64,000 bases of DNA from Mizuhopecten yessoensis (Eukaryota), in assembly GCF_002113885.1 (NCBI RefSeq), contig NW_018406560.1:165948-229947 (forward strand). The letters run 5' to 3'. A program made the translations under genes and the position numbers. The notes below the pieces were generated by a model, which was given only the letters and a program-made list of their open reading frames with translations, did no database searches and was not told the origin of the DNA. Positions 38,760 through 42,330 of the stretch are shown here, one piece after another. The stretch's first letter is position 1. Every line of letters starts with the position of its first letter.

Positions 38760-39400
38760 TAAATCCGTGTATTTTCAATGAACATATGACTCACCTTTGT
38801 CAGTGACAAATTCTCGAGATATTTATATTAATGGCCTATAGCAACCAATACAAGAAAGTGATAATTGAATTTTATGGAAGAAAACAATGTTGAACTCGTT
38901 TTGTAGAATGAAATCTAAGATGCTTTATGAGAATCGGATTCATCTCCCCGTACAAAGCCAGTAACTGGCATATGATTAATGTTCCTGGGCTCTGAACAGT
39001 TTTGCTGAACCTTGTGTATCTGATTGTAACCTACAGGGCCGATATAAACGGTATCTGTGTCGCCGAACACCCAGCCCTCTATCCGGATGACTCCTGCTAT
39101 ATTTATGTCCCACATTTATGTCCTGTGAGGTTTTCATACACCATTGCGTATGAATGGAAAACAGTTAGACGTCTGCCATATATGTTTATATTTTCAAAAA
39201 ACATGATACCGGTAAAGCAGTTAAGAAGGTGTGTGACTAGGCAGAATAACTGGAGGTTTTTGTTAGAGAACGTATCTATCTACTCAAATGTTTCCTCGAA
39301 CAAAGAGTGATACTTACAATTGACAATAGCGACCCTGCTGGGGACAACGGGAGACTGATCGGGTGGTCACGCATCACAGGTCATCTGAATCACTAATTAT
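38760..39400 (-). pseudogene. Decayed Merlin / IS1595 (ISXO2-like) DDE transposase relic
   Basis: With frameshifts, the minus strand gives in order RCPQQG, GHKYSRSH/RIEGWVFG, VQQN/VQSPGTLII and IN/SREFVTDKGE/HMFIEN. These resemble the family motifs WRC, RKYNRGHRVEGxWVFG, PGTxIxSD and VNHSxEFVxxxGxHTNxIE. No TIRs identified. Confidence 0.55.
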
Positions 39401-39944
39401 GTCTTATCGTCCATTTTTATCGTGGTTTTCCGTTATTTTAGAACATGTAACCTTGGTATTTTTTGGCCTTTTCTGGGTTTTGTCCACGTTTCTATGGCAA
39501 AATCCTTTGATATACGCATTTCTATTATGAGTAATGCTGTGATATATAGACAGGGCGTCCACATAAAGTGGGGTGTAAGGAAAAATGAAATGACATTTTT
39601 TTTAAAAATCTTTGTAGTGTATTGGAGCAGAAATTCCATCTTTTGAAAATATGATAAATAGTTGAAACCAATGAGAAATTTTGAATCCAAATGTCAATAA
39701 AAACAGAAAAGATTTGTGTAGATGGGTGGACAGGTGCATATGAGATGTTAGTCTACCCGGCGTTCGACACCACGAGTATCAGGTAGCCATTGGCAGGTGT
39801 GGTCAAAATCCTGGGGTCAACAGCAAATACAAAATCACCATGGTAACAAGATAAGTAGATATTTATTAAAAAAAGGCTGGCAATTCACATTCATGCATCA
39901 AAACGAAATGAACAATTTCTAAGTGTAACATCAGCAGCAATTAA

Positions 39945-41072
39945 GTAACGCTACCCTTCTTTATACAGTATAACCTCGACGTAACGCCACCCTTCTTTAT
40001 ACAGTGTAACCTCGACGTAACACCACCCTTCTTTATACAGTATAACCTTGACGTAACGCAACCCTTCTTTATACAGTATAACCTCGACGTAACTCCACCC
40101 TTCTTTATACAGTATAACCTCGACGTAACTCCACCCTTCTTTATACAGTATAACCTCGACGTAACTCCACCCTTCTTTATACAGTATAACCTCGACGTAA
40201 CGCCACCCTTCTTTATACAGTATAACCTCGACGTAACGCCACCCTTCTTTATACAGTATAACCTCGACGTAACGCCACCCTTCTTTATACAGTATAACCT
40301 CGACGTAACGCCACCCTTCTTTATACAGTATAACCTCGACGTAACGCCACCCTTCTTTATACAGTATAACCTCGACGTAACGCCACCCTTCTTTATACAG
40401 TATAACCTCGACGTAACGCCACCCTTCTTTATACAGTATAACCTCGACGTAACGCCACCCTTCTTTATACAGTATAACCTCGACGTAACGCCACCCTTCT
40501 TTATACAGTATAACCTCGACGTAACGCCACCCTTCTTTATACAGTATAACCTCGACGTAACGCCACCCTTCTTTATACAGTATAACCTCGACGTAACGCC
40601 ACCCTTCTTTATACAGTATAACCTCGACGTAACGCCACCCTTCTTTATACAGTATAACCTCGACGTAACGCCACCCTTCTTTATACAGTATAACCTCGAC
40701 GTAACGCCACCCTTCTTTATACAGTATAACCTCGACGTAACGCCACCCTTCTTTATACAGTATAACCTCGACGTAACGCCACCCTTCTTTATACAGTATA
40801 ACCTCGACGTAACGCCACCCTTCTTTATACAGTATAACCTCGACGTAACGCCACCCTTCTTTATACAGTATAACCTCGACGTAACGCCACCCTTCTTTAT
40901 ACAGTATAACCTCGACGTAACGCCACCCTTCTTTATACAGTATAACCTCGACGTAACTCCACCCTTCTTTATACAGTGTAACCTCGACGTAACTCCACCC
41001 TTCTTTATACAGTATGACCTCGACGTAACGCCACCCTTCTTTATACAGTGTAACCTCGACGTAACGCCACCC
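39945..41072. repeat. Minisatellite, 36-bp unit TTCTTTATACAGTATAACCTCGACGTAACGCCACCC (flank + TA + transposon TIR)
   Basis: About 31 copies; the last copy is the left end of the element at 41046. Confidence 0.97.
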
Positions 41073-41914
41073 GTTGTACCGCCAAACTCACATAACGCCA
41101 TCAATTTTGTCAGAACCAGTTTCCCCACACTTACATGAATCCGTCATACGGCCAAATGCCACAATGTTTTGCCACGCTATGGGCACAGAAATTTACCTGT
41201 GTTGTTGATTTCACAGCTGAGTGAGCCCCATATGGATCAGTTATAGATGTTGTCATTACGTATACAATGTAGTACATGTGTCTTATTGATTAAAACTGGA
41301 ATACTATTCACCATTATATTACCTCGGTTTGTTATCTTTTCATTCATTTACACCATAACTTATCCAAAGAGCAAACAGGTTGTTTTGGATTTTGAAAAAA
41401 AATCAAAGATTTTACAATATTCCGATTCATATCCAAAAGTTACACGAGATGTTGCCGATACTTTCACTAGTTTGTGGGATAAACCTATTAAATGTTGCAC
41501 TTTTGGCGATATTTTGAACAACAAATCGGATGTTATTGATGATACCAACGGGACCGTAGTGTTCATCATCATGTGGACATGGAATTAGCTTGATTTATGT
41601 GGTTTAAAAACACACATTCTCAAAATATACATGTGTCTGATGAAACCTTCAACAAAATGTCTGTTACTCGCATGTGACATGATAATCGTAATACAGTACT
41701 ACAGCTAATATGAATTTGCAAACTAATTATTGTATTATAATGTTTATGAACAATAAAAATTGCATATGTATACATTCATATTAGAATTTTCATTGTTTAG
41801 GTGTCAAATATGTGCGCCTGAACAAACGTATGTACATGTACAGGTAGACCACCTGTCACTTAAGGGGACAACTCGTCATTGGACGGAAGGTGGCAGTATA
41901 GCGGGGTTATACTG
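41046..41914. mobile_element. Tc1/mariner-pogo-type non-autonomous DNA transposon (~870 bp)
   Basis: TA|CAGT(G/A)TAACCTCGACGTAACGCCACC ... GGTGGCAGTATAGCGGGGTTATACTG|TA: ~26-bp imperfect TIRs, TA on both sides, subterminal TAACGCCA repeats. Confidence 0.75.
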
Positions 41915-42330
41915 TATACGATAACAATGTAGCATTACCCTGGTACCTACCTCAATGGGATAAACATATTTATCATATGAATACCGTGTAATGCAGTGTC
42001 ATAAAGCCATCACATAAATTATGTTTATGTAACGTGTGTAATATCACTCAGGAAATGATGTCACAGTAGGAACAATCAATGTGACGTCACATCATTGTGA
42101 AGTGGACACCTTTTTATCGTTTGAGAGGCTGCCGAGCGCAAAATTTTCTTTTTTGATTTTTCTTATTTGCTCGCTAGAGGCTCGCAAACATGAAAAATCT
42201 AAAACTTATATCATAAATCAAATATGAAGGGAAACTTATGACAGATTCTCTATATATTTAGAGAAAGAATGTGATATAGTTTGTGGGAATTATGACAGAA
42301 AGAAATGGTTCTAGATATTTAAAAGATGGC

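What the first reader, a model, noticed from the sequence alone, without database searches (positions are those of the whole stretch)
39945..41916. A minisatellite made of a transposon end: 31 tandem copies of a flank-TA-TIR junction
Seen: the 36-bp monomer is TTCTTTA + TA + CAGTATAACCTCGACGTAACGCCACCC. The last copy runs directly into the body of an ~870-bp element whose other end (GGTGGCAGTATAGCGGGGTTATACTG|TA, 41889-41916) is the inverted match. The array opens with GTAACGCTACCC, an 11/12 match to the TIR-internal GTAACGCCACCC 36 bp downstream. Known: CAGT...ACTG ends with TA duplications are typical of Tc1/mariner-pogo elements. Inference: the insertion junction itself was amplified, possibly seeded by that microhomology or by repair after single-end cleavage. 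The result is ~31 intact TA|TIR sites, which could act as a transposase decoy or as alternative ends able to mobilise part of the array. The monomer still has 3 CpGs, consistent with a young array.
Basis: partly seen in the sequence, partly recalled or inferred. Interest (0 to 1): 0.75.

Follow-up and report, generated by a model that had tools for sequence, protein, structure and literature searches.

The report
Minisatellite built from a transposon-end junction
A 36-base tandem repeat in a scallop-like genome is made of 31 copies of the point where an old, non-coding "cut-and-paste" transposon meets its insertion site. It is real, but it is best read as one more product of this genome's very active tandem-repeat formation, not as a working transposase trap.

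Summary
Window 39945-41072 is a 36-bp array of 31 full units plus 12 bp. Each unit is 7 non-element bases, then TA, then the first 27 bases of an 869-bp element (41046-41914).

That element belongs to a dispersed family in the same genome.

The unit junction occurs only at this locus. The array has the form A(BA)31 with a 12-bp direct repeat A (11/12 match). This is the known route from short flanking direct repeats to a minisatellite (the Haber-Louis model).

The surroundings argue for an ordinary cause. Tandem arrays cover 32% of this window and 11-12% of the DNA around other family copies, and only 2 of about 80 family ends carry a junction-spanning duplication. The family is old (copies 65-88% identical), non-coding, and has no identified transposase partner. 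No array-bearing derivative has moved. The decoy and alternative-end ideas are therefore unsupported.

The copy number of the 21 identical core units could not be checked with reads. Earlier notes of this scan report similar transposon-end arrays elsewhere in this genome.

Verdict: a real, clean new member of a known kind, of modest interest.

The parts
39945..39956 (+). 12-bp direct repeat A1 (GTAACGCTACCC) at the left edge of the array. It is either original flank or a decayed partial unit.
   Evidence: 11/12 match to element bases 16-27. No similarity further upstream, so the boundary is abrupt. The left flank 38900-39956 is single-copy in the genome.
39945..41072 (+). 36-bp minisatellite of 31.3 copies. 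Layout is A(BA)31: 12 + 31 x 36 = 1128 bp.
   Evidence: TRF; unit table; the junction pattern is unique to this locus.
40173..40928 (+). Homogeneous core: units 7-27, 21 identical units (756 bp).
   Evidence: The G-to-T variant units (4-6 and 28-29) lie on both sides of the core, which suggests a recent expansion inside an older array.
41044..41045 (.). Left TA target-site duplication, inside the last unit.
   Evidence: nearly all family copies have TA immediately before CAGT.
41046..41914 (+). 869-bp non-autonomous TA-targeting element, the member of the dispersed family at this locus.
   Evidence: 83 matches in the own genome; closest copy 78% over 600 bp. Ends defined by about 25 copies. 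No credible ORF or Pfam domain.
41046..41071 (+). Left terminal inverted repeat, 26 bp. The copy attached to the body has a derived G at base 5.
   Evidence: Left and right consensus agree at 23/26 and diverge after base 26. The majority unit matches the left consensus at 25/27.
41069..41155 (+). Subterminal direct repeat of about 70 bp (about 1.25 copies), inherited from the family.
   Evidence: The family consensus carries the same 21-bp block at bases 25-45 and 95-115. This repeat is expanded to 33 copies in another family member.
41889..41914 (-). Right terminal inverted repeat.
41915..41916 (.). Right TA target-site duplication.
   Evidence: 12 of 13 right flanks begin with TA.

Best explanation
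An old, non-autonomous Tc1/mariner/pogo-type element (TA target, CAGT...ACTG ends, 26-bp terminal inverted repeats) inserted here. Later, ordinary replication slippage or unequal exchange between two nearly identical 12-bp direct repeats lying 36 bp apart duplicated the 36 bp between them. One repeat lay in the flank and the other was bases 16-27 of the element. The duplicated stretch happens to contain 7 flank bases, the TA and the whole terminal repeat.

Further unequal exchange then grew the array. A recent burst produced the 21 identical core units, while the edge units decayed. The transposon junction is a passenger in this process: the region forms minisatellites at a very high rate and this one happened to start across a transposon end.

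Shown: the anatomy, the family boundaries, the single-locus status and the local repeat density. Inferred: the order of events, the seeding role of the 12-bp repeat, and the absence of transposase involvement.
For: The array is exactly A(BA)31, 12 + 31 x 36 = 1128 bp, with A matching 11/12. This layout is the one predicted by the Haber-Louis model as described in PMC6947457 and PMC3389668.

All units share the two copy-specific substitutions of this element's repeat (25/27 to the family consensus), so they derive from this local copy. The unit junction exists nowhere else in 988 Mb.

Variants sit at the edges and the core is identical, the pattern expected from unequal exchange (text).

Background: 23 unrelated arrays cover 32% of the window, and 11-12% of 146 kb around other family copies lies in arrays. 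Of about 80 family ends, only two carry junction-spanning duplications, against roughly nine expected from random overlay.

Short direct repeats drive other changes in the same family. A 70-bp subterminal repeat is expanded to 33 copies in C3959. An 83-bp mini-copy looks like a deletion between direct repeats. A sister subfamily has a variable internal repeat of about 65 bp.
Against: The 12-bp left partial unit could equally be a decayed remnant of a longer array and not pre-existing flank; no empty or single-repeat allele was available to decide. Two independent junction duplications in this family (this locus, and C5593) both end at the inner edge of the terminal repeat, at bases 27 and 26. 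I estimate this coincidence at roughly 5% probability, and pure chance slippage does not predict it. Hairpin-assisted slippage is not supported, with fold z-scores near 0. The expectation of about nine covered ends is rough, because many arrays predate the insertions.
Confidence: 0.68

Rival explanations
1. Transposase-triggered origin. Repeated nicking or one-ended cleavage at the left end, or a transposase bound on the terminal repeat blocking replication, provoked repair synthesis with template switching. This would duplicate the junction and then expand it.
For: The unit contains exactly the TA plus the complete 26-27-bp terminal repeat. A second, independent 2-copy duplication at a right end (L051 1865-1929, 32-bp unit = 4 flank bases + TA + 26 bp) has the same inner boundary. 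Earlier notes of this scan list other transposon-end arrays in this genome (unchecked). An analogous nick-promoted idea exists for partial Alu duplications.
Against: Junction duplications show no enrichment over the background repeat density. The family looks long inactive, with copies 65-88% identical and no coding copy among paired ends of 87-1846 bp. None of the 79 pogo-type DDE_1 hits lies inside a pair of these ends. The first-stage reader is drawn to such cases, so their recurrence in the notes is ascertainment.
Confidence: 0.12
2. The array started without the 12-bp microhomology, for example as a blunt tandem duplication by end joining. The left 12 bp would then be the stump of a unit cut by a later deletion.
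For: A 1-in-12 mismatch is in line with the decay of edge units 2 and 3, at 2 changes per 36 bp. Array edges are commonly truncated (text). The C5593 duplication has at most 1-4 bp of microhomology.
Against: It needs an extra event, whereas the A(BA)n arithmetic fits with none. The upstream boundary is abrupt and the flank is unique.
Confidence: 0.15
3. The array works today as a transposase decoy, or supplies alternative left ends that mobilise parts of the array.
For: 28 of the 70 genome-wide hits to the left-end 29-mer (up to 3 mismatches) lie in this array. Each unit keeps TA|CAGT and the whole terminal repeat.
Against: No transposase was linked to the family. The unit junction is found at no other locus, so nothing carrying array units has transposed. 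The units carry two substitutions inside the repeated 13-bp motif that is the likely binding site. The family copies are old. Expression could not be examined.
Confidence: 0.04
4. The copy number, and perhaps the identical core, is an assembly artefact.
For: The 21 identical units span 756 bp, which may exceed the length of the reads used (the sequencing platform was not established here). The assembly has 82,659 contigs.
Against: There are no N runs near the array. Structured variant units on both sides show a true array of at least about 10 units. This rival affects only the count, not the nature of the feature.
Confidence: 0.3

Closest known systems
Haber-Louis route to minisatellites, and the Alu-derived minisatellites of Jurka and Gentles (as described in PMC6947457 and PMC3389668)
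   Same: A unit bounded by short direct repeats is duplicated by slippage or unequal exchange and then expanded. A transposable element supplies one of the repeats. It is a single-locus array.
   Different: The direct repeat here is 12 bp, against the usual 5-10 bp. One copy lies in the flank, so the unit straddles the insertion junction of a DNA transposon (flank + TA + whole terminal repeat), not a stretch inside a retroelement.
Tandem-repeat-containing MITEs of bivalves (pearl family, DTC84 of Donax trunculus; PMC3879986) and Tetris of Drosophila virilis (PMC4079207)
   Same: A non-autonomous DNA element in a bivalve-type genome with tandem repeats next to its inverted repeats and variable copy number. 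The family member in C3959 (33 x 70 bp inside intact ends) is of exactly this type.
   Different: In the window the array lies outside the mobile unit. It includes the target-site TA and 7 non-element bases, is not bounded by the inverted repeats, and is not carried by any other copy.
Double-insertion tandems of McGurk and Barbash (PMC5932611)
   Same: The junction between tandem units contains the target-site duplication.
   Different: There the unit is a whole element plus one duplication. Here it is only 27 bp of the element plus 9 other bases, which double insertion cannot produce.
Exon-junction minisatellites ('mirages') and transposon-end arrays noted earlier by this scan in the same genome
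   Same: Tandem arrays whose unit spans a recognisable boundary, in a genome very rich in 25-75-bp arrays.
   Different: Those notes were not checked here.

Membership tests
Tc1/mariner/pogo superfamily, non-autonomous member | TA target-site duplication flanking the element | tested here: met
   left flanks end in TA in nearly all of 25 copies and right flanks start with TA in 12 of 13. The window copy has TA on both sides.
Tc1/mariner/pogo superfamily, non-autonomous member | Terminal inverted repeats starting CAGT / ending ACTG, with family boundaries at those bases | tested here: met
   similarity among copies stops exactly at CAGT and ACTG. The left and right consensus agree at 23/26.
Tc1/mariner/pogo superfamily, non-autonomous member | A DD(E/D) transposase encoded by an autonomous relative with the same ends | tested here: inconclusive
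   No long ORF in any copy. Paired ends give sizes of 87-1846 bp. The genome has 79 DDE_1 hits but none sits between these ends.
Minisatellite born from short flanking direct repeats (Haber-Louis) | Array of the form A(BA)n, with A a short direct repeat present at both edges | tested here: met
   12 + 31 x 36 = 1128 bp = 39945-41072. A matches 11/12.
Minisatellite born from short flanking direct repeats (Haber-Louis) | The pre-expansion allele carries both copies of A around one B | not testable with these tools
   The assembly holds no second haplotype. No other scallop genomes were in reach.
Tandem-repeat-containing MITE (pearl / DTC84 / Tetris type) | The array lies between the element's inverted repeats and travels with it | tested here: not met
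   The unit includes the TA and 7 non-element bases, and its junction occurs only at this locus. The feature is met by the relative in C3959.
Double-insertion tandem element | Unit equals the full element plus one target-site duplication | tested here: not met
   The unit holds only the first 27 of the element's 869 bp, plus 9 other bases.
Satellite DNA family | Many loci or long arrays of the same monomer | tested here: not met
   All 31 matches to the unit junction lie in this one 1.1-kb array.

The most novel reading that the evidence does not exclude
Transposon ends themselves nucleate minisatellites in this genome. A transposase-bound or nicked terminal repeat stalls replication or repair, so template switching duplicates exactly 'target TA + complete terminal repeat'. 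This would explain why two independent events in this family end at the inner edge of the repeat, and why similar end arrays turn up in other families of the same genome.
Probability: 0.1. Interest if true: 0.6.

Novelty: new member of a known kind. Interest (0 to 1): 0.3.

Why it matters
This is a clean, fully resolved example of how a tandem array can be born across a transposon's insertion junction. All the parts are still readable: the flank, the target TA, the whole terminal repeat, the seeding direct repeat, the decayed edges and the fresh core. Relatives in the same genome show an internal expansion, a two-copy junction duplication at another end (one early stage of such an array) and a deletion, all involving short direct repeats.

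It also shows that in this minisatellite-rich genome such junction arrays need no special mechanism, which sets the baseline for similar findings. Practical point: the 36-bp period is a multiple of three, so the array reads as a 395-codon open frame on the minus strand that gene finders may call.

Tried and rejected
- **Reads and expression.** Copy number, polymorphism and transcription remain unchecked.
- **Autonomous partner.**
  - The 113-aa ORF in the element has no Pfam match.
  - L042, which shares internal sequence, has no repeat ends and no ORF of 100 aa.
  - Twelve loci at unpaired ends gave no transposase ORF.
- **Second haplotype or paralogue of the site.** The left flank is single-copy. 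The right flank only hits an unrelated high-copy repeat.
- **Pre-existing satellite into which the element inserted.** Rejected, because the units carry this copy's own terminal repeat and exist nowhere else. L014, by contrast, is a true insertion into an older array.
- **Nested or double insertion as the source of the 9 extra bases.** Rejected: the element sequence after base 27 does not match them.
- **Hairpin-driven slippage.** Fold z-scores were about 0.
- **Literature search for the end sequence.** It found only primers.
- **Earlier findings by place.** None lie near this window.

Full report
**1. The observation**

Tandem Repeats Finder reports one array at 39945-41072: period 36, 31.3 copies, 98% matches, no indels. 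Each unit is seven bases (TTCTTTA), then TA, then 27 bases beginning CAGTATAACC.

Twenty-two units are identical to the consensus. Units 7-27 form an unbroken identical run of 756 bp, and all variants lie in units 2-6 and 28-31. Two of the variants are CpG transitions. A G-to-T variant occurs on both sides of the core (units 4-6 and 28-29), which suggests that the core expanded recently inside an older, already diversified array.

The last unit continues in register into unique sequence. The far end, 41889-41916, is the inverted match followed by TA.

**2. Is 41046-41914 a real transposon with those ends?**

Yes. A search of the window's own genome (987.6 Mb, 82,659 contigs) gave 83 matches. 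Many start at query base 1 or end at the last base.

I extracted the ends from about 25 copies. Similarity begins exactly at CAGT and stops exactly at ACTG, with TA outside and unrelated flanks beyond.

Pattern searches for the two ends (up to 3 mismatches in 29 bases; reversed controls gave 0) returned 70 and 49 hits. Pairing these by contig gives element sizes of 87-1846 bp, mostly about 1.2 kb. No copy has a long ORF, and the 113-codon frame in the window copy matches no Pfam family. Copies are 65-88% identical to the window copy.

The family is thus an old, low-copy (about 40 members), non-autonomous TA-targeting element. From general knowledge of the superfamily, this fits the Tc1/mariner/pogo type.

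The genome contains 79 pogo-type DDE_1 matches, some with open frames above 550 codons. None lies between ends of this family, and I could fetch no more loci. The partner is unknown.

**3. Family architecture**

The left and right consensus ends agree at 23 of 26 bases and then diverge, so the terminal inverted repeat is 26 bp. The array unit therefore contains the complete repeat.

Inside the left end the consensus repeats a 21-bp block at bases 25-45 and 95-115. This is a built-in direct repeat with a 70-bp period. A 13-bp motif within the terminal repeat recurs in that block.

The majority array unit matches the left consensus at 25 of 27 bases. Both differences lie in that motif and are shared by all units, so the units descend from this local copy.

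**4. Where the array came from**

The 25-mer spanning the unit junction has 31 hits in the genome, all in this array. It is therefore a single-locus minisatellite, not a dispersed satellite, and no element carrying array units has moved elsewhere.

The extra nine bases do not match the element's sequence after base 27, nor its right end, so nested or double insertion is excluded.

The arithmetic 12 + 31 x 36 = 1128 bp gives the layout A(BA)31. Here A is a 12-bp direct repeat, at the left edge matching 11 of 12, and B is 24 bp. This is the signature of the Haber-Louis route: slippage or unequal exchange between short direct repeats duplicates the stretch between them, and the duplicate then expands (described in PMC6947457 and PMC3389668).

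The alternative is that the 12 bp are the stump of a truncated unit. This cannot be excluded without a single-copy allele.

**5. Is the junction special?**

The surroundings say no.
- The window holds 23 unrelated arrays with period 10 or more and 3 or more copies. They cover 32% of its length.
- Around 39 other loci of the family, 11-12% of 146 kb lies in arrays.
- With about 80 family ends, random overlay predicts roughly nine ends inside arrays.

I found two junction-spanning duplications: this one, and a two-copy, 32-bp duplication of 'four flank bases + TA + 26 bp of the right repeat' in C5593 (L051 1865-1929). In a third case the element simply inserted into an older 35-38-bp array (L014). 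There is thus no enrichment that would call for a transposase-driven process.

Short direct repeats also explain other rearrangements in the family:
- a 33-copy expansion of the built-in 70-bp repeat, with a 279-bp higher-order period, inside intact ends in C3959;
- an 83-bp mini-copy that looks like a deletion between two copies of the subterminal block;
- a variable repeat of about 65 bp in a sister subfamily.

Single-strand folding of the units shows no unusual hairpin potential.

**6. What remains odd**

Both junction duplications stop at the inner edge of the terminal repeat, at bases 27 and 26. I estimate the chance of this coincidence at about 5%. It is the only hint in favour of a bound or cutting transposase seeding the event.

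Earlier notes of this scan list similar arrays at the ends of other elements in the same genome, including a TTAA element whose ends plus target copy were amplified. I keep this reading as the novel case, at about 10%.

**7. Function**

Twenty-eight of the 70 near-consensus left-end sites in the genome lie in this array, so it would be a large sink if a matching transposase existed. Several points count against a working decoy or alternative-end system:
- no transposase is linked to the family;
- the family is old;
- the units are mutated in the likely binding motif;
- nothing carrying units has transposed.

I give this reading about 4%.

**8. Limits**

The number of identical core units rests on the assembly alone, and polymorphism and expression are unknown.
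- No other scallop genome was in reach.
- The left flank is single-copy in the assembly, so no second haplotype could serve as a control.
- The species name (Yesso scallop) comes only from earlier notes of the scan.

**9. Verdict**

The feature is real and well resolved. It is a minisatellite born across a DNA-transposon insertion junction, most likely by ordinary slippage between short direct repeats in a region that makes such arrays at a very high rate. It is a new member of a known kind and of modest interest.

Noticed in passing
window 1-64000: Tandem arrays of period 10 or more and 3 or more copies cover 32% of the window: 23 unrelated arrays, periods 10-186 bp, up to 69 copies. No convincing coding ORF lies outside the arrays. 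The region looks like a minisatellite nursery.
   Followed up: partly
L041 2870-5900 (G000:C3959:22877-25881, minus strand): A family member with intact TA|CAGT...ACTA|TA ends carries an internal array of 33 x 70 bp, with a 279-bp higher-order period. The array is built from the family's built-in subterminal repeat and starts right after the terminal repeat.
   Followed up: yes
L051 1865-1929 (G000:C5593:857864-857928): A two-copy, 32-bp tandem duplication of 'four flank bases + TA + 26-bp right terminal repeat' of the same family. This is an independent junction duplication at an early stage, and it ends at the same inner edge of the repeat as the window array.
   Followed up: partly
L058 268-350 (G000:C5449): An 83-bp mini-copy consisting only of the left and right terminal repeats joined through the shared subterminal block, apparently a deletion between direct repeats. 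TA is on both sides.
   Followed up: partly
L014 145-352 and 1612-2430 (G000:C5378): A family copy sits inside an older 35-38-bp minisatellite, with array sequence on both sides. This is the reverse situation to the window: insertion into an array.
   Followed up: partly
window 41955-42260: Forty bases beyond the element's right end begins an unrelated, very abundant repeat of about 300 bp. It had 584 first-look candidates at 75-88% identity, and its second half matches on both strands, so it contains an inverted repeat. It is probably a MITE or SINE.
   Followed up: no
L056 3904-4739, L059 4434-4889, L061 135-673: A sister MITE subfamily with ends beginning CAGTAAAACC. Ten loci share an identical 29-base right end. 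It has an internal tandem repeat of about 65 bp with variable copy number, and copies are 80-91% identical.
   Followed up: partly
window 39941-41128, minus strand: Because 36 is a multiple of three, the array reads as a 395-codon open frame with a 12-residue periodic peptide. This is a likely false gene call.
   Followed up: no
G000, 79 places (for example C4988:46411-46905, C4400:1725-2243): Pogo-type DDE_1 domains occur in open frames of up to 822 codons without stops. They are either active transposons or domesticated genes. None is linked to this family.
   Followed up: no
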